A stretch of 64,000 bases of DNA from Podarcis melisellensis. Lineage: Eukaryota. Location of the stretch: assembly GCA_964234715.1 (NCBI GenBank), contig OZ174275.1. One strand, 5' to 3'. The notes beneath the pieces were generated by a model, which had not been told where the DNA came from, did not search any database, and saw only the letters and a list, made by a program, of their open reading frames with translations. The translations under genes were made by a program, and so were the position numbers. This document shows, piece by piece, positions 1 to 53,206 of the stretch (position 1 is its first letter; each line of letters starts with the position of its first letter).

Positions 1-1105
1 GCAGTGGGCATATAGCTGGGAAAGCTGCTTCATACAGGGATCAGCTTCATGATCAAGTTCCCCACAAAGACCTCAGTCACAGCTGACCCACCTATTACAG
101 ATGTCATATCATGCCATATTACAGATGTCATATATTATATCATGACTGCTGCTCTGACATCATTAGGAAACTGATCCACAAGATGTTCCTACAGTCTCTG
201 CACAAAAATTCCCTAAAATTTTCTGAAAATCCTGCTGTGCTTCCAAGGAACTGAATGCACATCTTCTTTGCATCTTTAACAAAACTATTATGCTATGGAC
301 ACCTTCATGCAATTCACTATTTACCCACTAAAACAGATAAACTAACAATAGTGAATAGGACCATTTCCCCCCTGTAAGGATAGCTTCATATACAGGGAAG
401 TGTTCTATGTGTAAACTAGATAACTGAATACGTAAATGAAGTTAATTTCTCAAATATCCGGTTGACATTACTGCAATCTGCTTTTTCTTGAAGGAACAAC
501 AGCAGCAGCACAATCACTTGTACAGGAAATTTTCCCTTCAAGCTGGGGTTTCTCAAGACCAATAATAGAAAGAACATGAATCTCAATGCCATTTATATTC
601 TGGTGACTTTTAAGGTGATCAGTATTGGAGCGCATGCTTGCCATACAGAAAAGTCCTAGGCTCCATTCCTGGTAAGATTTCCATCTGAACCCAAAAGATC
701 CAATGCCAGAGCTCTGTAGACCAGAGATTGGCAACTTGTGATCCTCCAGATACTGTCCAATGGCAACTCCCATCATCCTTGTTAACTGCACTAGTTGGGA
801 CCAATGGAAGTTGGAAGTTCAGGAACATTTGGAAGGCCCCTAAAATTCCCATCCTTAGTGTAAACAGCACCAACCATACACTCAGCAGTGTATGATTTCA
901 GAACAATTTGCATTTGACATAATTGGGGGTATTTGTACTCCATGAGTGGTATCCATGTAGGTTTATCTGTGTCTCTTATGAGTCACCAAAACGAAGAAGT
1001 TGACACCACAGACTTTGGCTCCTACTAGTAAACTGCAGTTACATGTAGGGTTTACAGTACATGTTTCATTATGTGTAGTTTTAGACTGAAGTAAAGCATG
1101 GCAAT

Positions 1106-1324
1106 CCTGCCAACTTAGCAGTTCGAAAGCATGTCAAAGCGCAAGTAGATAAATAGGTACCACTCCGGCGGGAAGGTAAACGGCGTTTCCGTGCGCTGCT
1201 CTGGTTCACCAGAAGCGGCTTAGTCATGCTGGCCACATGACCCGGAATAAAGCGAGATGAGCGCCGCAACCCCAGAGCCGGCCACGACTGGACCTAACGG
1301 TCAGGGGTCCCTTTACCTTTACCT
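1106..1324 (+). mobile_element. Sauria SINE, 5'-truncated
   Basis: Core gcaagtagataaataggtacc and (ACCTTT)n tail; 14-bp TSD taaagcatggcaat at 1092-1105 and 1325-1338. Confidence 0.9.
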
Positions 1325-3035
1325 TAAAGCATGGCAATATTTTTCCTCACATATTATTAAGGAATAACTACTTATAAAGGTGGTACAGTTAAAACTCAAG
1401 AACGTTTCACCCTTCCACTACTGCTAATCAATGATCAGCAAGTTCTCTCAGTCAGAAAAAAAAGTTTTGTACACCACGTTTTACTCCCTACTCAATATTC
1501 CTTAGCTCTCTGTGTTACAACGTAAGCCCTAGGTTTAGTTAAGTAATAAGACAAAAATCTGTAGAAGAGAGCTGATCAATACATATATTGTGTCAGCTAG
1601 AAGAGACATATAAAATAGACCTAGAAATATCCAATTTGTGATTTATTAAAGAATTCGGATAGGACTGCCAGATGTGTTCTGACAGTATAAAAACAAACAT
1701 AATTAAACTTGTGCCATCTGTAGGCACAATTTTGTGCTCAATACCGTTTCACAGGGTTGAACAGAGAGATGCATGACTGCAACTCTGCCCATGCAGTGGG
1801 GAATTTGCCCAGCTTCTTCCAGCTACAGCCTCTTAGTCTTTGCCCTGTGAAAAGCTGCTCTTGAGGGTTGGAAAGCCCACAGGAATAGCACAAGGCATGG
1901 CTCAAGGAGGCTGCTCTGGAAATTGATCTAAATTGGAGAGTTTCTGCACAAACAGAATCTGTATCACAGCCATGAGGCTATATACCACAGCACTACTCTT
2001 TTCTAAAGTGGAAACAATTAGATGACAAGTTTTTTGTTTTTATAATGAATCAACCCCCATTAGAATTATGAATCAAGAACACGGTGCCCACATACGCCTT
2101 CCCTAAATGAACATTGCAAAGTTAATTCCCTGAAATCGATGTAGGTGAATGCCTCACTTTCTAGTGTCCTACTCTGAGTGCTTCCACTTTGTTCCCAGTT
2201 TTATTTTCCAACTCTGGCCACACACAATGGATACAAAGCATAAGTACCTGTTACTGCACTGGTTCATGCTCATTCCTGCTATCCTTACTTCTGCCTTTCC
2301 ATCCCAACTCCTGTTCTCTCCCCACCTCATTGATATTTAGAACGCGAGGTCCATGGATCAGAAATTTGTCTTTGGTGCTCATTTTTCTCTGTTATGCACC
2401 ATGTACATGTATTGCAATCAATAATAACAACAATACTCAAAATACCATTGTATGAAAACAGTTATGGTCCACCAACCACAAAAACACTACAATATGTAAG
2501 ATCATTAAAATAAACACCATTTGCAAGATAAAAATGAAGAGAGATTTAGTACCCACTGAGGTTCTAGTAGAAAGGCAATTTTAAGGAAACCCCAAAGGTA
2601 GTAATTCCCTTTCTCAAATTCAAGAAACATTAATGAAATCCTATTTTTGTTTTCTTAAAAGTAAATTCCATCATAGTTAGTGAGGCTTACTCTTAGGTAA
2701 GTGTACATAGGATTGAAGTCTAAATTTAGCCACCACCTCCACCAGCCCAGTTTGGCAGATACCGCCTTTCATAACCTCTTCTCAAAGCTGGCTAATCATA
2801 ATTTTAGTACTCAGTGTCAACTGTGATCATTAAGCACTTACTGTGTAAATATCACGAGCTTCCTTAGGCATTTGCTTATTTTTATTTTTTTTGCAATTCA
2901 TTAACATGATATTATTTCCCAGCATTAGATTTAGGAGAGAAATCCGTTGCAGTTGTGCAGATTTTTTTGTTCTGTGCCTGGGCATTAAGACCATTTTTGA
3001 GATTCCACGCATATACAATCAAAATAGCAGTATTG

Positions 3036-3971
3036 CTAGACAGATAGTAAAAAAAAGATGACGACGAAGCAGAAGCGGGGANNNNNNNNNNNNNNNNNNN
3101 NNNNNNNNNNNNNNNNNNNNNNNNNNNNNNNNNNNNNNNNNNNNNNNNNNNNNNNNNNNNNNNNNNNNNNNNNNNNNNNNNNNNNNNNNNNNNNNNNNNN
3201 NNNNNNNNNNNNNNNNNNNNNNNNNNNNNNNNNNNNNNNNNNNNNNNNNNNNNNNNNNNNNNNNNNNNNNNNNNNNNNNNNNNNNNNNNNNNNNNNNNNN
3301 NNNNNNNNNNNNNNNNNNNNNNNNNNNNNNNNNNNNNNNNNNNNNNNNNNNNNNNNNNNNNNNNNNNNNNNNNNNNNNNNNNNNNNNNNNNNNNNNNNNN
3401 NNNNNNNNNNNNNNNNNNNNNNNNNNNNNNNNNNNNNNNNNNNNNNNNNNNNNNNNNNNNNNNNNNNNNNNNNNNNNNNNNNNNNNNNNNNNNNNNNNNN
3501 NNNNNNNNNNACTGAGCGAGTATGCATGTGTGTTAAATGCAGAGCTCCCTTAACAACTGCAGGACTGCCATTTAATCTGTTGGTAGATGGACCACTTCCT
3601 GTGGGAATTCNNNNNNNNNNNNNNNNNNNNNNNNNNNNNNNNNNNNNNNNNNNNNNNNNNNNNNNNNNNNNNNNNNNNNNNNNNNNNNNNNNNNNNNNNN
3701 NNNNNNNNNNNNNNNNNNNNNNNNNNNNNNNNNNNNNNNNNNNNNNTTTGATGCGCCGGGTTTTCTTTGTGTGTTGTTTATATTTTACTGCAGTATCACA
3801 ACTACACAAGGTATTCGTCAAATGNNNNNNNNNNNNNNNNNNNNNNNNNNNNNNNNNNNNNNNNNNNNNNNNNNNNNNNNNNNNNNNNNNNNNNNNNNNN
3901 NNNNNNNNNNNNNNNNNNNNNNNNNNNNNNNNNNNNNNNNNNNNNNNNNNNNNNNNGGATGAGTAAATATT
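3036..3971 (-). CDS. Probable large last coding exon of the same gene, partly masked: ...HLTNTLCSCDTAVKYKQHTKKTRRIK...IPTGSGPSTNRLNGSPAVVKGALHLTHMHTRS...PRFCFVVIFFLLSV*
   Basis: One minus frame stays open through all unmasked islands between three N-runs. The acceptor is either aaacAG at 3972-3973 (phase 0) or lies just inside the mask after a pyrimidine tract (tatttactcatcc). The true stop could be hidden in the mask. AATAAA (minus strand) occurs at 2881-2886. Confidence 0.55.
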   Translation of the reverse strand, partial: NIYSSXXXXXXXXXXXXXXXXXXXXXXXXXXXXXXXXXXXXXXXXXXXXHLTNTLCSCDTAVKYKQHTKKTRRIKXXXXXXXXXXXXXXXXXXXXXXXXXXXXXXXXXXXXXXXXXXXXXXIPTGSGPSTNRLNGSPAVVKGALHLTHMHTRSXXXXXXXXXXXXXXXXXXXXXXXXXXXXXXXXXXXXXXXXXXXXXXXXXXXXXXXXXXXXXXXXXXXXXXXXXXXXXXXXXXXXXXXXXXXXXXXXXXXXXXXXXXXXXXXXXXXXXXXXXXXXXXXXXXXXXXXXXXXXXXXXPRFCFVVIFFLLSV

Positions 3972-5348
3972 CTGTTTATCTCTCATTGTAATTCAGGTTA
4001 GTTTAAATACAGGGCTTCAAGATATCATTACAATCTATATAGATTTATTACATAATTTCCAAACACAGTGCCTGGTGGAGTTTTACTCAGCCAAACTAGT
4101 ACTGGGGTTTTCTATCTAAACCAGCATTTTAAAAAGGGAAGAAAGTAAGCCTTTCCATTATATATACTCACATATATATATACTGTGACACCTGGCAGAT
4201 AACACTCTTATTATATATTTCCTCATCAATTATCCAAATCTTAATTATCTAAATTTCCTTTTTATGTGGAGCAAGGTCATGTCCCTGCATACCCTTTAAT
4301 TAAACAGAAATCCTCTTTGTCACCCAAATTTATTCAGGTATTAATGCCAATACGATAAATTTTATAATTTAAAATGGCAAAATTAGATAACCACACACAC
4401 ACACACACACACACACATGCCCCCTGCCTTATTGAAATAACATACCTTTAAAGTACATGTTTTATTTTTTTAGCCTGCATCACAATAACATTAAGGCCAC
4501 TTTAGGCAATAATGAGCTGATAAACGTCATTCTCTGGAAAACGGTACATTAAACATGCAGGCAAAATCTTTGATAATCTCATTTCATCTCTGATGCATCC
4601 CCCTGGAGGACATGAACTGGTTTTTAATGAAAAAAATGGTTATGTCTTTGCTCATCATACCTGTAGCAAGGCTGGCCTGGTCTAAATTTAAGCTTTACAC
4701 TTCTTGATAATAAAACTCTATCCAAAAATGTTTATAAGCAAAGCAATAGCCAGACATTTGCAGTACTTGTGATAATTTCCCTAAACCTTATTTGGAAGAT
4801 ACCTGACAACTCCAAAAAGTGTACAATACTGGCAACGTAAAGCCATGGAGTCCAAGCGGTAAACACCAAATTATATTAAAGTTGAAGAAACACAGCATTA
4901 AGGGATGCCAACTTGCCTTTGAGAATGAACAGGGGTACTTAGCAGTCACTGCTCTCCTTTCTCAATATACTGTATCGGTTTTCAACAAATCAAATCAAAC
5001 CTCAAGAGATAGGTACTCGGTTGCTCCGTCAAGAAGGAACTTATGAGTTAGATGCGAGCAGCTTCTTCTTTTTTAAGCCCTCACAGTATTGCTTATGTCA
5101 AAGTATTCAAAAAAAAAATTGAGGAAGAAGGGAAAAAGAAAAAGCTGTGAGTGGTCAACTTAGTATTTAACTTAAAAAATATTGAATATAGTTGCCTTTG
5201 CTCTTCATCCTTCAGGTTTTTGGTTGTTTTTTTACATTTGTATACACCAAGTATCACTTATATTCGCTGATCCATAATGGCCGCTCAGCCCATCCATAAA
5301 AGGTGGGTGGCGGTTGTGACCTGGCGCATGAGCTCCTTCACCTCCCCG

Positions 5349-5960
5349 TGTAATAAAAGGTCATATATATATAAATATAGAAAATAAATGTTCATAAATG
5401 TACGAATCTAGCACGTACATAGATATGTGGACCATTTTGACTCCCAAACTGACCAAATGTTTTCTCTGCAAGGAGGTGAGGGAGCCTTCCCATTGTCTCA
5501 GGAATTAAGTGATCACCATCTCAAAGGAATGGCCAGACTACCAGGAAAAGCAATCAGATAAGGCATTATCAGATAACCTGGCAGACAGGAAAAACAACAA
5601 CATTCAAATTTCTGTTGTAGACCGCCTTTTCTGTGACGTGGGTATGATGTTTGTGGGGTGTGGTCTTGGGTTACACTCCTTCTGTGTTGTATGTATGATG
5701 TATGTATGGAGGGGTGGTCTTGAGCTCCAGGGCAGGGAATTTAAAACGTCTATATAAGGGCAGGCTCACCTTTGTCCAGGGTCCTCCTCATCTCTCCTGC
5801 GTGTGAGGGGAGCACCCTGTTGCAACAGCCTTAATAAAGATCAGGCTTTGCTTCTCAATATTCTCTGGTTGGCCTCTGTTATTTTCTCCTACTGATGGAG
5901 AACCTACAAAAGACTCTATAAAGGGCTCTTGCATACCCCATAAGGGAATAAGGGCAGACA
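5349..5960 (+). mobile_element. Solo LTR (ERV/Gypsy-like)
   Basis: TG...CA ends, TATA box (tctatataag, ~5750), AATAAA (~5833); no clean TSD. Confidence 0.55.
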
Positions 5961-6238
5961 CGCCAGTTTCCTATGTGGTCATTGGCTCGCACCCCCTGGC
6001 TATAGCAGAGCATCACGGGTCACCCACCAGACCCTGTTTTGAATCGTGCCTATCCGTGGTGGCCTGGGGGACGTGATCAAGGGAACGGACATGGAGTGGT
6101 AGTTTTCTCTCTGGTCCACTTCCAAACCATAAAGAACTAGCCGGTGCTGTTCACTGCAGCCCAAGCCACTCCCACCACTGCATATGTAAATGGAGAGGAC
6201 TGGGGGCCCTTCTCTTCTTTTATGTAGTCATTGCAGTT

Positions 6239-6480
6239 ACAGATAGGTAGCCGTGTTGGTCTGCCATAGTCAAAACAAAAAAAAAAAATTCCTTCCAGTA
6301 GCACCTTAAAGACCAACTAAGTTAGTTCTTGGTATGAGCTTTCGTGTGCATGCACACTTCTTCAGATACACTGAAACGGAAGTGTATCAGTGTATCTGTT
6401 TCAGTGTATCTGAAGAAGTGTGCATGCACACGAAAGCTCATACCAAGAACTAACTTAGTTGGTCTTTAAGGTGCTACTGG
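6239..6480. mobile_element. Penelope-like element remnant, inverted (fold-back) pLTR structure
   Basis: Near-perfect ~83-bp inverted arms; hammerhead motifs on both strands; TSD tagtcattgcagtt. Confidence 0.75.
6406..6444 (+). ncRNA. Minimal hammerhead ribozyme; an antisense twin lies at 6331-6369 on the minus strand
   Basis: Same CTGAAGA...GAAAGCTC core. Confidence 0.7.
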
Positions 6481-6541
6481 TAGTCATTGCAGTTTTGGAT
6501 GAGAGGCAGAAAGGACTTTAGAGTTCTGAAAACAGGGGCAA

Positions 6542-6630
6542 ATGGCTTTTCTCCATATGAAATGGACTTATGAATTGTAGCTTTTCTCCATATGGCTTTT
6601 CTCCATATGAAATGGACTTATGAATTGTAG
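6542..6630. repeat. Local tandem duplication of ~39 bp
   Basis: atggcttttctccatatgaaatggacttatgaattgtag occurs twice. Confidence 0.9.
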
Positions 6631-7744
6631 CAGGTTCTTGCTTTCTAATGACAAATAAAAACATCAGAAGAAACTAATGGAGACATGTTTATAGGCTTTA
6701 CGACATTCTGCAAGAAAAAGAAGAAATTACTGCGAAGGTTGTGAGTCCCTAGTTCAGGGTAGCCAACCTGCTCCCCTCTCCATGTTGTGAACTGCTCCTG
6801 ATGCTGTGGACGATTCCTACCGTCCCTGGCTATTGGCAATGCTGCCTGGGGCTAATGGGAGTTGTAGTCTGAAACAGTGGCAGGGCACCATGTTGACCAT
6901 CATATAACCCATTCTATATGAACTGTTTGCTGCTCCTCACCGGAATTCCAGCAACCATAAATCTTTTTTCATGAGAAAAAAGGGGAATCAGGCACCCAGC
7001 AGAAAATGTTTGAGCAACTACTTGGAGAAACGGAGATGTAAGCAGCTTGCTTTATTCTGCGAACAACCGTCAAGATGAGCCTCTGCCAGGTTTATTCAGT
7101 GGTGGCCAACTTTATTGGCAAGTGCCATTCTGCTGTGTATAGATGATGGAGAAATGATAGATAGTATGAGAGACAGCTGACAGGATGATCATAACAACAC
7201 TATCTCCTACTTAAGACTTGACTTGTACCCCTCTAACCCCACTGCCATGAAGGAAAGAAAGAAAAAGCCAGCATCTTGAATAAAGATCTAGCATGGGTTA
7301 GAAATGGAAAAAGGGGTGGTGAACAAAGAAAAGATGTTTAAATACACAACACAGTAACTCTTCCATAATACTAAGGGCTAAGCCAATGTGGTACCCTCCA
7401 GACATTGCTGGAATCTAGCTCAGATCAGCTCCAGTCAGCATGGCCAATGCTGGGATCCACCATCTGGGCAGCACCACATCAGCTACTCATAGACTGTAAA
7501 CTCCATGTGCAATTCTTTGAATGAGCCCATTATTTCTGAACTGCAGCTAAATTGAACTGAATAAAATCCTAACCCCGGGGGGTGGGGGAGAGATCGTAAA
7601 AAAATCACAACACAAAAAAGAATAGTATTTACAGCTCTAACGCATACTTCCTAAGCCTCCAATGGCCATGACAGATCAGGGATTTTGCAAACTGAACTAC
7701 TGTACGTTGGAACACAAATATACTGTTGCACGCCCCCCCCCCAA

Positions 7745-7980
7745 TCCATGGATGGATTGCTAACAGATTCGGTGGGTGGCTAACAGACTGAGGTTGAATC
7801 CTGACAAGACAGAAGTACTTTTTGGGGGGAGGGCAGGCAGGTATGGGTGACTCCCTGGTCCTGAATGGGGTAACTGTGCCCCTGAATGACAAAGTGTGCA
7901 GCCTGGGAGTCATTTTGGACTCACAGCTGTCCATGGATGCGCAGGTGAATTCTGTGTCCGGGCCAGCTGTCTACCAGCTA
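7745..7980 (+). mobile_element. L2-clade LINE RT fragment
   Basis: Encodes WVANRLRLNPDKTEVL...SLGVILDSQLSM. Confidence 0.8.
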
Positions 7981-8394
7981 TGTGTAAGTCTCAGAACTTG
8001 CAAATGGTCTCTTTGAAAGAATTAACCTTTTGAACCTTTCTTAGGGTATAGTGACCCCTAAAGGTACTAAAGTTGAACTGGCTACAGAGGTTCTAAAATG
8101 TAATAGAATGAATACATGTTTGTTGCTGGCTGTGAAAAGGGGAGTCTGAAGGACACCTTTGGATCTTGTTAGGTGCAGTGGTCCAGTTTCCTCTGAGCCA
8201 CATCTTAGAAACCTTGATCTGGCAATAATGGAAAAGGAATTCAACAAGTGGGTATAGTGACCATTCATAAAACAGCCATAAGTCAAGGAAACATTTCCTG
8301 TGGAGATCACAACTAACCCCATTGCCAACTACAAAAAAGGAAACTCATGCCACAACAGTCTGCATAATAGTTAGGATGGCTTCCCAAAGGAGAT

Positions 8395-8443
8395 TTCTTT
8401 CTTTCTTTCTTTCTTTTCTTTCTTTCTTTCTTTCTTTCTTTCT
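8395..8443. repeat. (TTTC)n microsatellite
   Basis: Directly visible. Confidence 0.95.
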
Positions 8444-10778
8444 CACCCGTGATATTCAACGTTTAACCCACTTCCCCATAAATTCTCTATATTTTATGCT
8501 TTGTGGACCCATTTCATGAGTTGTTGTAAAAACAGAACAGTTGGGTGGTGAACTCCAGTCCACAGCTTGGATGTGGCCTTCTAGGCCTCTTTCCTCCCAG
8601 TCTTTGGCACTCTCCCCAAAGCAACCTCTCTCTGTGCCCTCCTTGAGTGCTTTTGTCTGGCTAAAACATCTCATTGAACTGTGATAATGCCCCTTGATTG
8701 CCAGGATGGAGAAATTTGTAGAGAAATCTCTGGCCTTTGCATGGCTGGAATCTAGCCTCCTGTACAAAGGTAAACAAAATCACATCAATGGCTCTACCCG
8801 CTGAGGCTTCTGGCTCTTCCTACCTCTGGCAAGCAGCCCCTGAATAGTTTTCAACCCCTTGGGGGCTGAAAAAAAGGGTTCCCAATTTCAATAGTAGAAT
8901 ATGCTGGTACAACAGGGTGCTGGTCTTGCAGTTTCACCTTGTCTAGATTCCAGTCCTTAACATTTCTCCTCCATCCTGCTCACTCACAAGAGGGCCCAAA
9001 CAACATTTAGGAAACAGCCCTCCTTCTACATTCATACAAGCACCAAAGAGCACAAAGCTCTGCAGGAGAGAAATGGCCAGAGAGAAGGGAGATGAGAGAA
9101 ACCCCTTTCTTAGGAGAGTTTAAGTGGAAAGTTAGATATATGCGAGAGGAGGAGTAAGTTCCCTTCAGGACTGAGATTGAAGCAGCACGAAGCACTGGGA
9201 CATATATACACACAAGTGTGAATGTAATGTGATTCTAACTAGGGATTTTCTGATCTATTATGTTCTTGTGTTTCTTGTGGCAAGCCACTCACAGCTGTGG
9301 AGTAAATGACATTTACTACTACTCCTCCTTCTTCCTTCCCTACACAACGCTGAATCTTCTGCCCCAAGGGACCCCGGTAGACAGATCAGAAGGCTCCTGG
9401 TTTGAATCTTGGTCAACTCAGAATCCAGTTTCTAACCACAAATGTCAAGTTCCCTGCCTCCAGCCCATTTCCCAATGCAGTTTTATGTTTGAAGAACTCC
9501 ACACTCCTCCTTCTTTTTAATCTTTCCTTTTTAGCACATTACATTTAACTGCTTATTAAATCAAATTGAAGCAAACAAGATGGCTGCTCTGGCTACTGGC
9601 TCTCTTCAGTTTGTAAGGGATTAGCACTAGGCAATGCTGTTGCTAGCCTGTAACTTCTCCATGCCTGCAGCTTGGTCTTGGTTTTATGTGGAGAAACAGG
9701 AAGCTGATGCTTTTCAGAGCCTGTAATTTAGAGCTGCTAGGTCAACCAGAGATGCACCTAAAATAATAGTACAAAAAGGGTTTTCTGTTTGTAATTTTGA
9801 TTAAAGTGGATATTCTTCAGAGAGAATGAAATCAGTCAGTCACTTTGATATTGACTCAAAAGCTGCTGGTGATAGGAAGAATGGATGAATTGCTAGTGTT
9901 GATGTACTTTCAGTGCTTCCTTGGAAACTAGAGAGAGATGGGCGTAGTGCAATTAACCGTGAAGTGTACCTCTACTGAACCACCAGTACAGCTCTCCAAT
10001 GCTAAAAGGGAGGCAGGTTTCCTCTTGCATTATTTTGCATTCATAAAGATGTTCTAAACCCTTTCAGGAAAAAGAAAAGCGGCAAGACAAGGAACAGCAC
10101 GTGCAAAGAAATGCAACATATGCCTCTCTCTCTCTCTGCACCCATGATCCATTTGCCAAGGCTGCATATGTGGACCTCTTCCGGCCCAGATGCAATTGAA
10201 CTGACCTTTGGAAGGGACAATGGGGCTTCCGTCTGCACCTGCCGCAGGTAGTTCCTCCCAGCTGATACCACATTTATTTACTTGCTTACTGTCTGCACTT
10301 ACAACCCACCCTTCAACAAATGGTTGCAGTAATGTCATAATTAAAATAAGTAGAACTTACACTAACGTCAGAAACTAAAACTGCAAACATCTAATGACAA
10401 CAACGAACAAAACAGAACAGCTAGTCACAGCAATTTATTTTGTTAATCACGAGTTCCATATAGATGCTGAAGGTCCTTGTGTTTCCATGTATGTGTCTCT
10501 GCCTAAGCATTCTGGGGGGGCACACTGTTTGGCGTGAGCTGTCTTGTCCTCCTGACCAGGTTACTGCCCCCAGCTCTGCTCCTGAATCTGAACTGGAAGG
10601 AAAAGAGTGCTTGGGGGAGGGCCTCCTCTTTGTTATCAAGGGCAAGGCAGCCAGAACTGCTGCCAACGTTGGCTATAATTTTCAGAACTGTAACTTTCAG
10701 AACTCTTGCTCAAGTTGCAGCGTTGGATGGTAGAGCAACTCTCCACGATACATGCGATAAGTAAGGCTTAATTCGCTT

Positions 10779-11200
10779 AAAGCTATGGTTTTCCCAGTAG
10801 TAATGTATGGAAGTGTGAGCTGGACCATAAAGACGGCTGATCACTGAAGAATTGATGCTTTTGAATTATGGTGCTGGAGGAGACTCTTGAGAGTCCCATG
10901 GACTGCAAGTAGATCAAACTTATCCATTCTGAAGGAAATCAGCCCTGAGTGCTCACTGGAAGGACAGATCCTGAAGCTGAGGCTCCAATACTTTGGCCAC
11001 CTCATGAGAAGAGAAGACTCCCTGGAAAAGACCCTGATGTTGGGAAAGATTGAGGGCACAAGGAGAAGCGGACGACAGAGGACGAGATGGTTGGACAGTG
11101 TTCTCGAAGCTACCAGCATGAGTTTGACCAAACTGCCTGGCGTGCTCTGGTCCATGGGGTCATGAAGAGTTGGACACAACTAAATGACTAAACAACAACA
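10779..11200 (+). mobile_element. BovB (RTE clade) LINE 3' fragment
   Basis: Encodes RVPWTASRSNLSILKEISPECSLEGQILKLRLQYFGHLMRREDSLEKTLMLGKIEG; (CAA)n tail; imperfect TSD aattcgctt/aattcactt. Confidence 0.92.
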
Positions 11201-11410
11201 AATTCACTTGGAACGGCATGAAGCAAGGAAGCCTACAGGAGTAAGATGCAAGGAAAATGGATGGACAGCATGGATAATGCAGCTAGGACACACATCTAGA
11301 GTTTTTCTTTCTAGAATTGAAGGCATAGTCCCTCTCCCCAATTGGCAATGGGACTGAAATACATGGGAAGGGAAAGGTTAGCTGTTCCCTCTGCAGCCCT
11401 GATTCCAATA

Positions 11411-11571
11411 CAGTCGTACCTTGGTACTCGGACATTTTGGCTCCCGAGCATCGCAAACCTGGAAGCGAGAGCTCCTGCAGCCAATCGGAAGCCGCGTCTT
11501 GGTTTTCAAACCTTTCTGGGAGTCCAATGAACTCCCGGAACGGATTAAGTTTGACAACCAAGGTACGACTG
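11411..11571. mobile_element. Tc1/mariner MITE (CAGTCGTACCTT TIR family)
   Basis: cagtcgtaccttgg...ccaaggtacgactg; TA TSD. A relative lies at 27022-27242. Confidence 0.85.
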
Positions 11572-11684
11572 TAAATATTGTTTCCTGCCCCCCTCCCCCG
11601 CCACAATTAACCTCAGGGGGAAAGCTCCCATTCATACCATTGGGAGCTCTCCCACCACCAGCAAACTGCACCATAGGACATATA

Positions 11685-11968
11685 CTGTATTTTTCACCCT
11701 ATAGGACACACTTTCCCCCCTCCACAAATGAAGGGGAGATGTGTGTGCGTCCTATGGGGCAAATGCAGGCTTTCGCTGAAGCCTGGAGAGCGAGAGGGGT
11801 CGGTGCGCACCAACCCCTCTCGCTCTCCAGGCTTCGCGCAGCTCTCCGCAAGCCGTGGGAGCCCGGCGCTGAGCTCAGAGTTGCCTGCATGCCGAAGCCC
11901 TTTATTTCCCCCCCAAAAAACTAGGTGCGCCTTATGGGCCGGTGCGTCCTATGGGGCGAAAAATACGG
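11685..11968. mobile_element. pogo/Tc2-like MITE
   Basis: TIRs ctgtatttttc...gaaaaatacgg; TA TSD. Confidence 0.8.
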
Positions 11969-11984
11969 TACTCGCTGTCAAGAT

Positions 11985-12311
11985 CAGGGCTCAGCAAACT
12001 TTTTCAGCAGGGGGCCGGTCCACTGTCCCTCAAACTTTGTGGGGGGCCGGACTATATTTTTTTTTTGGGGGGGGGAATGAATGAATTCCTATGCCCCACA
12101 AATAACCCAGAGATGCATTTTAAATAAAAGCACACATTCTACTCATGTAAAAACACCAGGCAGGCCCCACAAATAACCCAGAGATTCATTTTAAATAAAA
12201 GGACACATTCTACTCATGTAAAAACACGCTGATTCCCGGACCGTCCACGGGCCAGACTGAGAAGGCGTTTGGGCCGGATCCAGCCCCTGGGCCTTAGTTT
12301 GCCTACCCATG
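11985..12311 (+). mobile_element. Non-autonomous hAT element
   Basis: cagggctcagcaaact...agtttgcctacccatg; perfect 8-bp TSD gtcaagat; internal ~62-bp duplication. Confidence 0.9.
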
Positions 12312-12674
12312 GTCAAGATCATGGCTGCAAAGGGTTAAACTCCCCCCCCCATCGCACACACCGAAACCCCAATGCTAATACCTCCCCCTATTTGTAATTA
12401 CAGAAAGAAAACTCAGGTGTGCTTCCCAGCCATTGTGCAATTAGGATAGCAGTTCAGCCCTCTGCTACGTATATATTATCCTTCCAGACAAACAAAAAAA
12501 AAGGTCTGGTTTAAAAGGAACATGCTTGCAGTTACATCACTTAACAGAAAAGAAGTGAACTTTTTTTAAACAGTCACTTTTACCTACCAGCAGGAACAAA
12601 TGCATTCCATCCAGGCATTGCCTAGCGTTGGCATAGCCCCTGGGGTTATGTATCAATACCTCAGAAGTCCTTAC

Positions 12675-12771
12675 CTTTTGACCAGTCCTCCATTTGTATT
12701 TCTGAACTTGTTTGATCTGGCAAGGTCTCCGCGTCTTACTCCAAGACTTCAGAGCTAAAGTAAAGCCAAGT
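12675..12771 (-). other. Candidate 97-nt internal or alternative exon
   Basis: Strong acceptor ttttacgtttatttatctAG and donor AAG|GTaagg. It is open only in phase 2->0 (LGFTLALKSWSKTRRPCQIKQVQKYKWRTGQK); in phase 0 it contains a stop. Confidence 0.35.
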
Positions 12772-14068
12772 CTAGATAAATAAACGTAAAACAATATATC
12801 AGAACACACCTATACCTTGCCCTTATTTGTCAGGGAATTTACAAGACAAATGACTCAAAAAAAATGTTTATAATAGGACAATAAAACCTGTTTATTTTAA
12901 CAGGTGACATTAAATTGACTTTCACAGTAAAAGATATTTCTGTTCACACTTTCAGTTTAGATAGATTTATTCTGTTCTCTGTTGAATTTAATGATGGTGT
13001 TGAGAAACATATTAGTCCTCAAAGCCTGATCCTGGCAACAGTTATTACAAAATAGAATGAGTAGGTCCAGGAAAGCAAATATGATTACTTTTTTCTTGGT
13101 CTGCATTACCAGTGGTAGTTAATGCAGGATTAGGTCACGTCAAGGTTTTGCTCTGCATAATCCTTAGGTATATATGCAAGTATTACAGAGAGAAAGTTCT
13201 CACAATATTTTCAGATTCGTATTAAGATACATAAATCACCATGTTAACATTTTTAATTTGTGAGAATAGTATGTCCATTAGAGACAATGTGGAATTACTG
13301 TTATTATGCCTGCATTATCACAGTTTTGTGACTTTTTGGTTGGTCTTAATAAAGGTATTACCCAACCATGGGTTTTGGAAAGTTTTTCCCTTTCCTGGTC
13401 CAACATGGCTACCCTTGTTCTTCATGTTTCTTATAAGAAGAAAATTTATTTCTTAGGAACCCCAGATGGCCATAAAATGAAATAAAATGAGAAACCTAGC
13501 CATCATGTGGTTATCAAGTTCAAAATAAGGAACAAGAACACTTAAAAAAAATTATAGATAAGTAGCTTATACTGTATAGCCCGTACTTGATTCAGCTCTA
13601 AGAATACACAGTGAAAGCAAGATGAGAGATTTTAAGGGACTTTCTTCTCAGGAGTGAGAGAGAATATTACCTCAGACCCTGAAGTCTGAATTTCTTACAA
13701 AAAGTCCTCAAATGAAGCTGTAACTTTGGCTTTTTCAGTTCTGTGTAACTGTGTTGATTTGGGGTTGGCAATTCCCCCCCCCCCATATAAGTTCCTCATT
13801 TACTTTTGGATTAGCTGGAAATATAGAAGGTTATTATTAATATCAAAGAAATGTGTTTTAAGTCAATGAAGTCTTTCCTCTACATATTGCACAAAAAGGT
13901 CCATAATAATTGCAGTCTTTTAATAAGGTATTCATATAGCAAGAGATGAAGAAAATACAGTCTTTAATAACCTCTGGAGTATTTTAAAACATGTCTTAGG
14001 GCCTTAAAGTGCCTAGTAATATACTATTTAAAACCACAATTTTATCCCTCCACAATATACAGTCATAC

Positions 14069-14363
14069 NNNNNNNNNNNNNNNNNNNNNNNNNNNNNNNN
14101 NNNNNNNNNNNNNNNNNNNNNNNNNNNNNNNNNNNNNNNNNNNNNNNNNNNNNNNNNNNNNNNNNNNNNNNNNNNNNNNNNNNNNNNNNNNNNNNNNNNN
14201 NNNNNNNNNNNNNNNNNNNNNNNNNNNNNNNNNNNNNNNNNNNNNNNNNNNNNNNNNNNNNNNNNNNNNNNNNNNNNNNNNNNNNNNNNNNNNNNNNNNN
14301 NNNNNNNNNNNNNNNNNNNNNNNNNNNNNNNNNNNNNNNNNNNNGGCATGCTCTTTTATACAC
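14069..14363 (-). CDS. Coding exon (295 nt) of the same gene; reads K-CIKEHA...[masked]
   Basis: Acceptor ttttcctatacCAG precedes 14363. The N-run ends exactly at the donor GTatga (14068). The phase-2 start completes AA|G (Lys) from the upstream exon, and the exon ends in phase 0. Confidence 0.75.
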
Positions 14364-16281
14364 CTGGTATAGGAAAATGCTGCCCTCTCCTGGATATCGA
14401 ATGTGATTATCCACTCCAACAGCCACACTAATGTGAAGTATGGCAAAATGCAAGGTGTGAACACAGGAGAATCTTTGAAGGTTAAAAGTCATTACTGCAT
14501 TTCACACGCACAAACCATCAACTATGGTATTAGCCATAGTAGATTGCCAGCAAGAATTACTTAAATTACACACAGCCAGCGTTCATGGGCTTGCAGGAAA
14601 ATGAGTCTTGTTGATCCGCAATGGAATTAGACGGACAGCTTTATTCACAAAGCACTTCTTACACAAATATAACCTGCTCGGAGAAAATCATTTACAATGT
14701 CACGTATAAAGACTATGCAAATGTCTGTTTTGTGGAATGTACACAATTTAGGAAAAGGCTTCCCAAAATATGTTTCCACAGAAATATAGAACTGGCACAG
14801 TTATCTTGCATGATGATGGCTGCAATCTTATACCCATTTATAGCTGGGAGGAAGCCGTACTGAACTCAATAGGACTTCTTTCCGAGTAGAGATGAATAGG
14901 ATTTCACTGTACATTTTTTCCTATGCAGGGATTATATCCTACCCACGTTTAAAATAATCCCCCTAACCAGCGTATTAAAGATTTAAGGCTATTCCAGGGT
15001 CATGAACATATTCTATTTCTAAAGAGAAAATATATTCTATACAGTCAATTTTTGAAAATACATTAAAAAAAATCTTTAAAACTGCACTGGGAAAACTTAC
15101 CATTGCCTTCAGTTATATATCTATAATCCATAACCAAACATTAATAAATAAAATTATTATTATTAATAATAATAATAATGATGAAGGCTGTTAAATAGTG
15201 TACACTGATGATGTTTAATAGCGTATACTGAAAATGCACACAGATTACAATAACTTATTTTCAGAGTACAACATGCATTACAATCTAGTTCAAGTTAGTT
15301 AAGACCCACTGAAGTCAACAAGTTATTTGTGACTAATTTGATATCAATGACGCTTAAGGGCGACAAATTTTAGCTGCCTTGGGGCTACGTTGTCTTTTTA
15401 ATCACAGTTAAATAATTTCTGTTGGTGTTGACTGAATCAGGAGTTTTCTTTGACAGCTGCCTTCAGATACCGTAAAACTATAATAATTATTTTCAAAACC
15501 AATATTATTTAGTTTACAGTATTGTGGTAAAGTGAGAAGGAAATAAGCTTTATATATCTGTGAAACCACATACAGCCTTCCTCTGTACAGACATCACTAA
15601 TGTGTCAGTGTGTTTTTGAAGCTTTAAACAAATCAAGAACATAAGCACACTTAGATATTTGTTTACATCAGCCACCAGACACTGCAATTTGTGTAAAAAG
15701 CATAAACATATATAAACATAACCAAGCATTGCCAAATTATACAAATTAAAAGATACTAGAGTATACCACCCTCTCTTAACAGACAGAAGCAAATGAAAGG
15801 TTATGTTAAACAAACAATAATATGGAATTTGAATCACAACACTGAGTCACTTTTAAGACTTTGTGCTTTAGTCTCTCCATGGATGCTTTTTTTCTTTTTT
15901 GCAACAAAACATGCTTATCTTATTAATCTTTAAATGTTTTCAAATAACCCTTGTAGATACGAATTCAATTATTTTATTAGAAGACATATTATTAATTTTA
16001 AAATGTACAGCACATTTACTTTGCCCTTTAATGCCATGGTCTTATTTTTCTATTCAAATCTTGTACACTGTAAGTTAATTGCTTTTGGAAACTACTTATT
16101 ATTCATGTAAAAATTAATGTGCCAATGTGTTTAAATCCTTTTAAATGACCATTCATGCATCCTTCCCGTTTAAGTACCGATGAAATCTGTCAAAGATATC
16201 AGTGCAAGATGGTTTTAAAGAAAGTTCCAATAAAGATTTTTCCCCCTGCTAACATAAGATTTTCATTTTCACCAACTTTAC

Positions 16282-16494
16282 TTGAATTCCATTAATTTNN
16301 NNNNNNNNNNNNNNNNNNNNNNNNNNNNNNNNNNNNNNNNNNNNNNNNNNNNNNNNNNNNNNNNNNNNNNNNNNNNNNNNNNNNNNNNNNNNNNNNNNNN
16401 NNNNNNNNNNNNNNNNNNNNNNNNNNNNNNNNNNNNNNNNNNNNNNNNNNNNNNNNNNNNNNNNNNNNNNNTGAATTTGGATTCAGACATTATG
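16282..16494 (-). CDS. Coding exon (213 nt) of an unidentified minus-strand gene; reads (I)MSESKF...[masked]...KLMEF-K; ATG at 16490 may be the start codon
   Basis: Minus-strand acceptor ttcttccAG precedes 16494 and donor GTaaag follows 16282. The frame is the same on both sides of the N-run 16299-16471. The exon ends in phase 2 (AA|). Confidence 0.75.
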
Positions 16495-17215
16495 CTGGAA
16501 GAAATCTTTAATAACAGATCTACTGGTACATTTCTGTATTCTTAAGCAAGAACGAGATCTTCTCATAATTCAAACAATTAAAAGAAACACGTCTACATCT
16601 TAAGGTTTCAGGCTTTCTGTAAATACACACAACACATCTTAACTCTAATGGAAACTTCGGCATTTTCAGAACAAAGGACTGGGTACCTATTAAAAAGTAA
16701 TACTCATGTCTCTCCCAATACGCACCTTATTTGGTCTTAATTCATAGGTGCTTTGCAGTTACGAACATGTGATTAGATAGAGGAGACCTTCAGGTCTCGT
16801 TGCAAGAAGGTGCATCGGATTCAAACCCAAGACTTGGCACACATATGTCTATCTTGTTTTTATATATTTTTAATGAAATTAAGTAGTCGTTTACCACAAC
16901 CTCGTTCAGCAATAGCTTTAACCAAAAGCAAACCATAAGCCTTTCCAGGGACCTCTCCAGGAAAAGAGTGAATTATTTTTTTAATAAATAGTCACAGGAC
17001 CTGACCTCCTCTGAGAGGAGGATAGTGTTGAGAAACTGCTGCCTGATTATAATGTGGGTAGGCTATCACTACAGATTTGCTTTAAAGCAAGCAGGGAACC
17101 GTTCCTTAGCCCAAGAGCTGCATCCCTTGGGCTCACCCATCTGGGAAACACTTGCTGGTGGTTGGCAAGGCCAAAAAAGAGGGTGTGACCAAAGTGGGAA
17201 GGGCTAAATCTGGTA

Positions 17216-37656: not shown

Positions 37657-37836
37657 TTATACCCTGCCCATCTGGCTGGGTCTCCCCAGCCACTCTGGGC
37701 GGCTTTGAACAAAGTATTAAAATACGTGTGACATCACTATAGAAGATGTCTTCTCATGTGAGAAAAGGGAGGCTCTCTCCAATAGTTCTTGCCCCCTGCA
37801 GGCTTTATAAGTACATGTAATAAAAAGGGCATGACC

Positions 37837-37980
37837 TGGGATAGCTCAGTTGGTAGAGCATGAGACTCTTAATCTCAGGGCTGTGGGTTCAAGCCCCAGG
37901 CTGGGTGAAAGATTCCTGCGTTGCAGGGGGTTGGGCTAGATGAACCTCGTGGTCACTTCCAACTCTGCAATTCTATGATT
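37837..37980 (+). mobile_element. tRNA(Lys)-derived SINE with CR1 tail
   Basis: tagctcagttggtagagcatgagactcttaatctcagg...gttcaagccc followed by ttccaactctgcaattctatgatt. Confidence 0.8.
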
Positions 37981-50447: not shown

Positions 50448-50732
50448 GTGAGCGCGGTAGACACCCGGCGGTGTTTTCTTGCTAGCCAGCCGAAGCGAGA
50501 AGGGAACTTATAGGGGATCGTCTTCTATCCTCGCGCCCCAACTTCCTAAACCGGAGTCCTTTTAGACGTTCTCGAAGGGATCAGCCCGGCATTCACCGAA
50601 CCGGGTCTGCCACATTTGTCTCCTCCTTGCGCAGCGGAGGCTCCGGCCCCTGGGCTGGCTCTGGCTCGGGTCCCAGTCGTGTGGTCTAAAGGTTACAGCG
50701 CCGGGCGCCCCCGGCCAACTTCGTAGGGGTGG

Positions 50733-50735
<3 letters not shown>

Positions 50736-50798
<63 letters not shown>
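50736..50798. repeat. (GA)n microsatellite inside the CpG island
   Basis: Directly visible. Confidence 0.98.
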
Positions 50799-50799
<1 letters not shown>

Positions 50800-50804
<5 letters not shown>

Positions 50805-51138
50805 GGCGCTTCTTGCCAAGGCTCCGACCCGCCTGCTCCTCACTCCCCTCCCTCTGCTTTTCCCGCCCCGTCGCTATTTCCGAGCCCAGGGGAAGACGCC
50901 TTGCCTCCCCTCCCGCCGCCACCCAAAAGGAGGTGGTCCGACCTCCCCGGCGGCGCAACCTCGGACGCGCTCCCAAGACAGTCGCGGGGCCGCTCCTCCT
51001 CCTCCTCCTGCAGCGCGACACCGGCGGAGCTCCACGCGGTTTCCCACCCACTTCCACGCGCGCTGGTGACCATGACCGGGAAAGCCAGGGGCTTTGGGCG
51101 CGAAGCGGCCCACCAGATCCTGGCCGGAGGATCCGCGG
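50800..51138 (+). other. Probable first exon of an unidentified plus-strand gene; start approximate; ATG at 51072 gives MTGKARGFGREAAHQILAGGSA
   Basis: Perfect donor CGG|GTAAGT at 51139 inside the CpG island. The accATG context is good, but it could be a uORF. Confidence 0.6.
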
Positions 51139-53206
51139 GTAAGTCGCCGGCGACTCCGGGAAGGCACCCTTTGCGCGCGGGCGCGATCTTGCCCTCCTCC
51201 GTTACTGAAGCCCCTTGGAGAGGTTTGGGCTCCCGCGCGGCGGCCTGCTGCTTTTTCAACCGCTGCAAAGTTTGCCCGGGTGCCGGAATCCGCCCCCTTT
51301 CCCTCTCTGCCCCGGCTCCTCGGTTTGTATTCGCGTGCGCCGAGCTAGGCCCGCCTCCTCCAAGCCCCATAGGCTCCTCTGGCCGGGCTTCTCCGCCCTC
51401 CTCATGTTGCGTAAAGGGAAGTCCCGGGTTCTGGGCGCCGCCTCCGCTTGCGATTCCTTCCTGAATGGGCTCCTCTTCGGGCTTGAAAGGAAGGCGGAGC
51501 TGATGTACCAGGAAGGGCTGTTTGCTTCTGGAGTGAAATAGATAAACGTGTGTTGGTGTGTGTATGATGCGATATGGCGGGCAAGTCCAACTCCCAAGGA
51601 CTGCCACCTACTCCCAGTATTAAAAGCTGGCAGTGACATTAGAGGGAGGAGGAGCCACAGTTGTTAAGCTTTTTTTTACGGAAGATTGATCAGAGTTGTT
51701 GACCTTTTTGGAGAGAGGACTGACCAGAGTTGTTGAGCTTTGGGGGGGCAAATGCCATACATGACAAACATTCATTCTCTGTTATTTTAATCTCAGTGCA
51801 GTTCAGCATTTTTGTTTAGACCTCATTTAGCTCTGTACATAGCTGTGTATTATAGTTGTAGATAGAATAAAAGAAGATACAGTACTCTACAGAGCTGCTC
51901 TCCAAGTCATTTATGCTCTGCTATACTCTGCTGTGCGACGACTGTCTTCTTGTTGGAGTGAATCCGGTGCTCACAACTCTAAGCTGTGAGTCCACAGCAC
52001 TTTGACCTAGTCCTGTGCAGAAGGTGGTCTCTGGAAGTGCTACCCAGCTCGCCTGGCCCAGTCGGGGCTGAAGTGGATGAGTCCAGTCGGTGGCACTGGC
52101 TCAAGGGCGATGCTGACAATATATACATATATACATATATATATGCATTTATGTATATATATGTATTTATAGGACCAGGCAGACGGTTTCTAAAGCATTA
52201 AGCGGCACTTCCTAGATTCTTCTCTGAAAGGATTTACTAAGTTGTTTCTGACAGTGACTGGAGAAATTGAGATGTGAAACCGTTAAGGCGAAATGTGTTG
52301 TATGGGAAATCCAGCCGGAAGACAAGATGTATATCATGGAGTTAGTGATCTAACATGGTTACCCTTCCTGCCTCTGTTCCTTCCCCCTCCTTAAGTTTTT
52401 GATGGTTTGAGACCAGTTTTTGATGTCCTAATCAGTTGGGCGGAGGTGAAGCCCCTCACACAGCTGCCTTAGTCTGGGAGGATAGTGCTGGAAACCTACT
52501 TTGATGTTGGAAATTATTGTGGGAAAGCAAGGCATTGGGAGGAGCTGGCAATCTATAAAATCGGATGGTTTGGGCAGAAGTTTTGAGAAGCTAGTGCAGG
52601 GATTGATCGGCTGCAGATTGAGGCGACTGGGGGAGTCACTTTGCCACTTCTTGAGGGCTTCCAAGTGGCAGATAGAAGTGCATGCTTGGTATGTATATAT
52701 TGCTTGCTGTTTAGAATTAGTCTTCTCCTCCTCACTCACTTGTGTTCTGTATCGCTTCTGAATTTCCTTTTAAAACAACCACCTTGTGTTTGGCAAGACA
52801 TTTGTGGACTTCCTCCACCTTCCTTAGCTGCTCTGATGTGAATCAAAGCCATGTAGTTTCAGAGCACTGGGGAATTCACATTCAGAAGAGAGGCATTTGC
52901 TGTAGCGTTGGTTTGATCCTCTGGGTTGAACTCAGGTCTCTATATCCACATTTTTTTCCTTGTTTGGATTAAATGGCATCTCTGTTAATTGATAAATTAC
53001 AGGGGCTGTGTTTATCTGAATTGGTTGTTAGGAATTTTTTGGGTGGTCAAGTTGTGAATTTATGGTTCCTAAAAGATGTGGGTAGCCAGTTGTTGTTTTA
53101 TTCACATATTAAATAATAATAATCCCTGGCTTTTGCCCCGAGTTGTGTAAATTATGTTGTAGGCCTGCAAGTCATGATTCTTACAATAAAGCTCTAGTAG
53201 GTGTTG

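What the first reader, a model, noticed from the sequence alone, without database searches (positions are those of the whole stretch)
3036..16494. The N-runs hide the coding core of an unidentified ~470-aa minus-strand gene
Seen in sequence: all five N-runs lie inside minus-strand exons; one ends exactly at a GT donor (14068); exon phases chain correctly (213 nt ending AA|, then 295 nt starting |G TGT ATA AAA GAG CAT GCC and ending in phase 0); one frame stays open across the last exon. Inference: these are masked conserved coding blocks, and the unmasked islands are variable linkers (a basic KYKQHTKKTRRIK stretch and a G/S/P-rich stretch). If no stop is hidden in the mask, the protein ends in a hydrophobic PRFCFVVIFFLLSV, which would suit a tail anchor or GPI signal. 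This is the main protein-coding unknown in the window, and I cannot name it.
Basis: partly seen in the sequence, partly recalled or inferred. Interest (0 to 1): 0.75.

Follow-up and report, generated by a model that had tools for sequence, protein, structure and literature searches.

The report
Masked exons of an ordinary conserved gene

Summary
On the minus strand an ATG exon (16490-16282) and a 295-nt exon (14363-14069) have good acceptors and GT donors. One mask ends exactly at a donor, and the phases chain (209 + 295 nt = 168 codons).

In the 3.0-4.0 kb block one minus frame stays open through both unmasked islands to TAG 3036 (p = 0.026 in shuffles). This also argues that the N lengths are exact, meaning deliberate masks and not gaps.

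It gives a 302-codon ORF: ATG 3058 lies 24 nt before the first N, and TAA 3964-3966 follows two codons after the last N. Both strands open by chance: p = 0.0026.

The proposed acceptor at 3971 is weak. The visible hydrophobic tail is only 12 residues after Pro-Arg, and a basic KKTRRIK patch looks like a nuclear signal. A tail anchor is therefore unlikely and a GPI signal unsupported.

Every search on the unmasked pieces was blank, so the gene cannot be named without the masked letters, which I did not look up.

Verdict: an ordinary conserved gene of low interest.

The parts
16282..16490 (-). First coding exon. ATG is at 16490 and the acceptor ttccag| ends at 16495. The donor is CAA|GTAAAG after 16282. 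It is 209 nt long and ends in phase 2. Of these, 173 nt (16299-16471) are masked.
   Evidence: The donor score is at the 90th percentile of all GT sites on this strand. The other two frames have stops right after the acceptor.
14069..14363 (-). Second coding exon, 295 nt. The acceptor is ccag|G and the donor |GTATGA lies exactly at the end of the mask. It ends in phase 0. Of these, 276 nt (14069-14344) are masked.
3036..3971 (-). The minus frame is open from cag|AAT (3971) through both islands to TAG 3036-3038. Three masks lie inside it (132, 136 and 429 nt). The acceptor may instead be hidden in the first mask, behind the pyrimidine-rich TTTACTCATCC.
3058..3966 (+). Rival plus-strand ORF of 302 codons (MTTKQKRG ... 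DE*). The ATG (A at -3) lies 24 nt before the first N. TAA follows two codons (D, E) after the last N. An in-frame TAG lies 6 codons upstream. The palindrome CTAG at 3036-3039 bounds both ORFs.
3747..3824 (.). Unmasked island A, 78 nt. In the minus frame it is hydrophilic with a basic KKTRRIK patch. In the plus frame it is hydrophobic and Cys-rich. Only one frame is open on each strand.
3511..3610 (.). One frame is open on each strand.
2881..2886 (-). AATAAA on the minus strand, about 150 nt after TAG 3036. It is the candidate poly(A) signal of the minus gene.
50500..51500 (.). The only strong CpG island of the window (GC 0.64-0.68, CpG o/e 0.8-0.9, with a (CT)n run). It lies 34 kb upstream of the ATG exon. 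It is a candidate promoter or 5' UTR exon of the minus gene; this is untested.

Best explanation
The N-runs are exact-length deliberate masks laid over the human-like, deeply conserved coding parts of an ordinary vertebrate protein-coding gene on the minus strand.

Shown:
- Two canonical coding exons (ATG 16490; 168 codons) have proper splice signals at or next to the mask edges.

Inferred:
- The gene is transcribed from a distant upstream promoter, perhaps the CpG island at 50.5-51.5 kb.
- It splices 16282^14363, then from 14069 into the 3-4 kb block.
- That block then supplies about 310 more codons, a stop at 3036 (or earlier, hidden in the mask) and a short 3' UTR ending after AATAAA 2886.
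- In this reading the protein has conserved N- and C-terminal domains joined by hydrophilic linkers with an NLS-like basic patch. That fits a nuclear regulatory protein better than a membrane-anchored one.

Its name cannot be recovered from the roughly 75 visible residues.

The confidence of 0.5 is for the full three-exon model. That the runs are masks over exons of a real, ordinary conserved gene I hold at about 0.9.
For: Exon anatomy and phases.

The minus frame is open through both islands in exactly the phase left by exon 2 (p = 0.026).

Two or more of the six frames are open in only 1.1% of shuffles. The block is therefore coding and the N lengths are right modulo 3.

The block is the only masked (human-like) sequence in the 14 kb downstream of the exon-2 donor, so it is the natural next exon. 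Nested opposite-strand genes are rare (own knowledge).

The islands translate on the minus strand to hydrophilic, linker-like peptides, as expected for the least conserved parts. KKTR fits the K-K/R-X-K/R NLS pattern (pattern from own knowledge).

AATAAA lies 150 nt after the stop.
Against: The acceptor at 3971 is poor.

A plus-strand ORF is bracketed more tightly by a start and a stop.

If the minus frame is real, the plus frame stays open in only 3.6% of codon shuffles. In the reverse case the figure is 23%.

The word search of the minus ORF (172-546 aa range) found nothing. The 1.84-billion-representative search of the island-A piece also found nothing, although an identical island would score 57 bits.

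A T8 run lies inside the supposed coding tail.

No RNA evidence could be obtained.
Confidence: 0.5

Rival explanations
1. There are two genes. The minus gene has only its first two coding exons in this window, and its intron 2 runs past the window start. The 3-4 kb block is a separate, conserved gene on the plus strand with an unspliced coding sequence of 302 aa (ATG 3058 to TAA 3966). It would be nested in that intron, and the open minus frame would be its by-product.
For: The plus frame is open through both islands (p = 0.032).

The ATG has A at -3 and lies 24 nt before the mask. An in-frame stop lies 6 codons upstream. The stop codon follows two codons after the last N.

P(minus frame open | plus real) is 0.23, against 0.036 for the reverse case.

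The A8 run would then lie in a 5' UTR and not in coding sequence.

The minus acceptor is weak, and the minus ORF has no database match.
Against: It needs a nested opposite-strand gene, which is rare (own knowledge).

There is no CpG island or other promoter-like feature in the 3 kb upstream. The CpG-rich patch at 1100-1320 reads, from my own recall of the sequence and without a repeat-library check, as a SINE copy.

The non-conserved islands would encode hydrophobic peptides with 5 cysteines in 58 residues, which is odd for the least conserved parts of a protein.

The plus pieces also found nothing. The 302-aa length range could not be searched, because 3517-3607 may no longer be sent to search tools.
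Confidence: 0.32
2. The block is the minus gene's last exon, but the stop codon is hidden in one of the masks. The protein is then roughly 175-290 aa. The rest of the block, including one or both islands and the hydrophobic 'tail', is a strongly conserved 3' UTR.
For: No protein in the database carries the island peptides.

The islands and the tail are AT-rich, contain a T8 run and lie close to AATAAA 2886.

The rough codon-usage score is not coding-like, but the test is uninformative: the null SD is 12 bits.
Against: Non-coding islands would leave two of six frames open in only about 1% of shuffles.
Confidence: 0.1
3. The N-runs are ordinary assembly gaps of estimated length, and the exon-like flanks are coincidence.
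For: The scan program's generic note says so. Continuity could not be tested with reads.
Against: The lengths are irregular (429, 136, 132, 276, 173).

Every run sits beside an ATG, a splice site or an ORF end, and one ends exactly at a GT donor.

The frames are kept across the runs.

Confidence: 0.03

Closest known systems
Ordinary deeply conserved vertebrate genes (often regulators in gene-poor regions) whose exons keep high nucleotide identity between reptiles and human
   Same: The exons are human-like enough to be masked, while the introns are not. There are few exons and long introns (1.9 kb and 10 kb). The nearest CpG island lies 34 kb upstream. No other conserved sequence occurs in 47 kb.
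   Different: The particular gene could not be named. All searches on the visible residues were blank.
Intronless genes nested on the opposite strand in an intron of a larger gene (for example MAB21L1 in NBEA; own knowledge)
   Same: Under the rival reading, a single-exon conserved ORF lies antisense inside intron 2 of the minus gene.
   Different: Here the host exons are the first coding exons. No promoter-like sequence is seen upstream of the ORF. The strand is not settled.
Tail-anchored and GPI-anchored proteins
   Same: The minus reading ends in a hydrophobic stretch.
   Different: Only 12 hydrophobic residues are visible and they are preceded by Pro-Arg. The visible N-terminus (MSESKF) is not hydrophobic. 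An NLS-like basic patch lies in island A.

Membership tests
Canonical spliced protein-coding gene (GT-AG introns) | Start codon, AG acceptors with a pyrimidine tract, GT donors and compatible phases | tested here: met
   Met for exons 1 and 2. For the third exon the visible acceptor is weak (25% pyrimidines), so that junction is inconclusive.
Canonical spliced protein-coding gene (GT-AG introns) | Spliced reads across 16282^14363 and from 14069 into the block | not testable with these tools
The exons are almost wholly masked in any case.
Tail-anchored membrane protein | A single C-terminal transmembrane segment of about 16-25 hydrophobic residues close to the C-terminus | tested here: not met
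   The visible tail has 12 hydrophobic residues bounded upstream by Pro-Arg. The length criterion is from own knowledge.
GPI-anchored protein | An N-terminal signal peptide plus a C-terminal omega site, spacer and hydrophobic tail | tested here: inconclusive
   The hydrophobic C-terminal 12 residues would fit the tail part. The N-terminus is visible for 6 residues only (MSESKF, not hydrophobic) and is then masked. The omega region is masked.
Protein with a classical nuclear localisation signal | A K-K/R-X-K/R basic cluster in an exposed region | tested here: met
   KKTR lies within KKTRRIK in island A, minus frame. This is a pattern match only, and it is valid only if the minus frame is the real one.
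Any Pfam family / solved structure / database protein | Significant sequence match | tested here: not met
   There were no hits for any unmasked piece on either strand. The two PDB rows at E 0.38-0.48 (yeast eIF3a) are at chance level. The masks hide about 85% of the residues, so this says little.

The most novel reading that the evidence does not exclude
The 3-4 kb block codes on both strands. It would be the last exon of the minus gene and, antisense to it, a conserved 302-codon plus-strand ORF, each with its own start or stop at the mask edges. Both frames are open through the visible islands (p = 0.0026 in shuffles). The same palindromic CTAG bounds both ORFs.
Probability: 0.02. Interest if true: 0.7.

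Novelty: already known. Interest (0 to 1): 0.1.

Why it matters
It matters little for biology. By construction the masked exons resemble human sequence, so this is a conserved gene with a human orthologue that any annotation of the unmasked assembly will name.

It matters for the scan in two ways. First, 'unknown gene' calls that rest on masked exons are artefacts of the masking. Second, an open frame across N-runs should be checked on both strands before a protein model, a length or a membrane anchor is proposed.

Tried and rejected
Searches that were blank:
- Word search of the minus last-exon ORF with X (172-546 aa).
- The 1.84-billion-representative search with the minus island-A piece. 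A local control shows that an identical island scores 57 bits and an 80% identical one about 31-46 bits.
- PDB phmmer, exon by exon and on both strands. One search was a frame slip.
- Pfam.
- Paper search for MSESKF.

Other attempts:
- A codon-usage log-odds score, using a human table recalled from memory, does not discriminate: the null SD is 12 bits. I discarded it.
- The CpG-rich patch at 1100-1320 was considered as a plus-strand promoter and rejected. It reads, from my own recall and without a repeat-library check, as a SINE copy.
- The islands were considered as short introns and rejected, because they have no GT/AG at their edges.
- Recalling candidate genes from memory gave no match to MSESKF / KLMEFK|CIKEHA.

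Steps left out on purpose:
- The joined three-exon protein was not searched.
- No other copy of this genome, nor any contig holding the masked letters, was fetched.
- No attempt was made to fill the N-runs.

Reads:
- After I kept 3517-3607 out of search tools, with one slip: the Rfam scan of the whole window included them by oversight. It found nothing there and nothing was taken from it.
- Local scripts read the window file only.
Full report
**What is there**

The window has five N-runs and no others: 3082-3510, 3611-3746, 3825-3956, 14069-14344 and 16299-16471. Their lengths are 429, 136, 132, 276 and 173. Earlier notes of the scan say the genome is a lizard's. The look-up by place returned only this same stretch and one unrelated note.

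**Exons 1 and 2 (minus strand)**

- ATG 16490 lies 4 nt after a ttccag acceptor. The other two frames hit stops at once.
- The mask begins 19 nt after the ATG.
- After the mask come 17 nt (K L M E F, then AA) and the donor GTAAAG. Its crude score is at the 90th percentile of all GT sites on that strand.
- Counted from the ATG, the exon has 209 nt.
- Exon 2 begins ccag|G at 14363 and reads (K)CIKEHA.
- Exon 2 is then masked up to 14069, and the very next bases are GTATGA.
- 209 + 295 = 504 nt, which is 168 codons ending in phase 0.
- These two exons are as good as exons can look when about 90% of their letters are hidden.

**Are the N-runs gaps or masks?**

I could not test continuity with reads.

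- The lengths are irregular.
- Every run sits next to an ATG, a splice site or an ORF end.
- Reading frames are kept across the two internal runs of the 3-4 kb block. Two or more of the six frames stay open through both islands in only 1.1% of shuffles.

The minus frame that follows from a phase-0 acceptor at cag|3971 is stop-free through both islands and ends at TAG 3036-3038. Shuffles keep it open in 2.6% of cases.

Three points weaken the model.
- The acceptor is poor. It has 25% pyrimidines, and AG dinucleotides lie between the CTAAC branch-site match and the proposed AG. A better acceptor may be hidden in the first mask behind TTTACTCATCC, but then the phase argument is lost.
- The word search of this ORF covered the 172-546 aa range, which includes the predicted protein of about 480 aa. 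It found no protein with the island peptides or the tail. The search of 1.84 billion representatives with the island-A piece also found none. A local control shows that an identical island would give 57 bits.
- The visible hydrophobic tail is only 12 residues long and follows Pro-Arg. It also contains a T8 run.

A plus-strand frame is also open through both islands (3.2% of shuffles). Both strands are open together in 0.26% of shuffles.
- That ORF runs from ATG 3058 to TAA 3964-3966, 302 codons, starting MTTKQKRG and ending DE.
- The ATG has A at -3 and lies 24 nt before the first N.
- An in-frame TAG lies six codons upstream. It belongs to a CTAG palindrome that also gives the minus stop.
- The plus stop codon comes two codons (D, E) after the last N, one visible base completing the preceding masked codon.
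- Codon shuffling gives P(plus open | minus real) = 0.036. It gives P(minus open | plus real) = 0.23.

Points against the plus reading:
- It would have to be a gene nested antisense in intron 2 of the minus gene, which is rare.
- Nothing promoter-like lies upstream. The CpG-rich patch at 1100-1320 looks to me like a SINE copy; this rests on my own recall and was not checked against a repeat library.
- The least conserved parts would then encode hydrophobic, Cys-rich peptides. On the minus strand the same parts encode hydrophilic, linker-like peptides with a basic KKTRRIK patch.

A rough codon-usage score does not discriminate, since its null SD is 12 bits.

I put the three-exon minus model at about one half. 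The nested plus ORF gets about one third. A hidden early stop with a conserved 3' UTR gets about one tenth.

**Naming the gene**

Nothing could name it.
- Pfam, PDB and the word searches on each exon or piece, searched apart and by reference on both strands, were blank or at chance level.
- A paper search for MSESKF was blank.
- About 85% of the residues are masked, so these blanks say nothing about novelty.
- I did not search the joined three-exon model.
- I did not fetch any other copy of the locus, and I did not try to fill the N-runs.
- After I kept places 3517-3607 out of search tools, with one slip. The Rfam scan of the whole window included them by oversight, found nothing there, and nothing was taken from it.
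- The plus ORF could therefore not be searched in its own length range.

**How it most likely works**

- Shown: two canonical 5' coding exons of a conserved gene.
- Inferred: transcription starts at a distant promoter, possibly the only strong CpG island of the window at 50.5-51.5 kb.
- Inferred: splicing runs through 16282^14363 and from 14069 into the block.
- Inferred: there is a short 3' UTR ending after AATAAA 2886.
- If the minus frame is right, conserved N- and C-terminal domains are joined by hydrophilic linkers with an NLS-like patch. That points to a nuclear regulatory protein and not to a membrane-anchored one.
- The tail-anchor reading fails on length. The GPI reading cannot be tested, and it sits badly with the basic patch and the non-hydrophobic visible N-terminus.

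**Verdict**

This is a real but ordinary conserved gene whose identity is hidden by deliberate masking. The proposed anchor is unsupported. Interest is low. One look at the unmasked frames, or stranded RNA-seq, would settle the strand and the name.

Noticed in passing
window 37834-37907 (+): A tRNA-Lys (CTT) is predicted by ARAGORN and matched by Rfam tRNA (39.8 bits; gathering score 29). It lies alone in an otherwise featureless stretch. It could be a true tRNA gene or the head of a tRNA-derived SINE.
   Followed up: partly
window 6287-6488: There is a near-perfect fold-back: 94-nt arms, 96% complementary, with a 14-nt loop. It gives only sub-threshold matches to generic miRNA hairpin families on both strands, and no hammerhead family at E <= 1. 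Tandem 43-nt repeats follow at 6539-6631.
   Followed up: partly
window 1090-1320 (+): A CpG-rich patch (16 CpG in 400 nt) reads, from my own recall and without a repeat-library check, as a SINE copy. It is not a promoter.
   Followed up: partly
window 50730-50810: A long (CT)n/(GA)n microsatellite lies inside the only strong CpG island of the window (50.5-51.5 kb). It creates spurious ORFs of more than 120 aa on both strands.
   Followed up: no
window 12093-12227: Two tandem 64-nt copies (97% identical, spacing 71) lie in intron 2 of the minus gene.
   Followed up: no
window 2300-4000: Fourteen small runs (122-438 million letters, 2015-2019) from four other coded organisms hold about 8% of the sampled 31-letter words of this stretch. 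Some unmasked part next to the masks is therefore identical in other species. This could be conserved flanks picked up by capture or transcriptome libraries.
   Followed up: no
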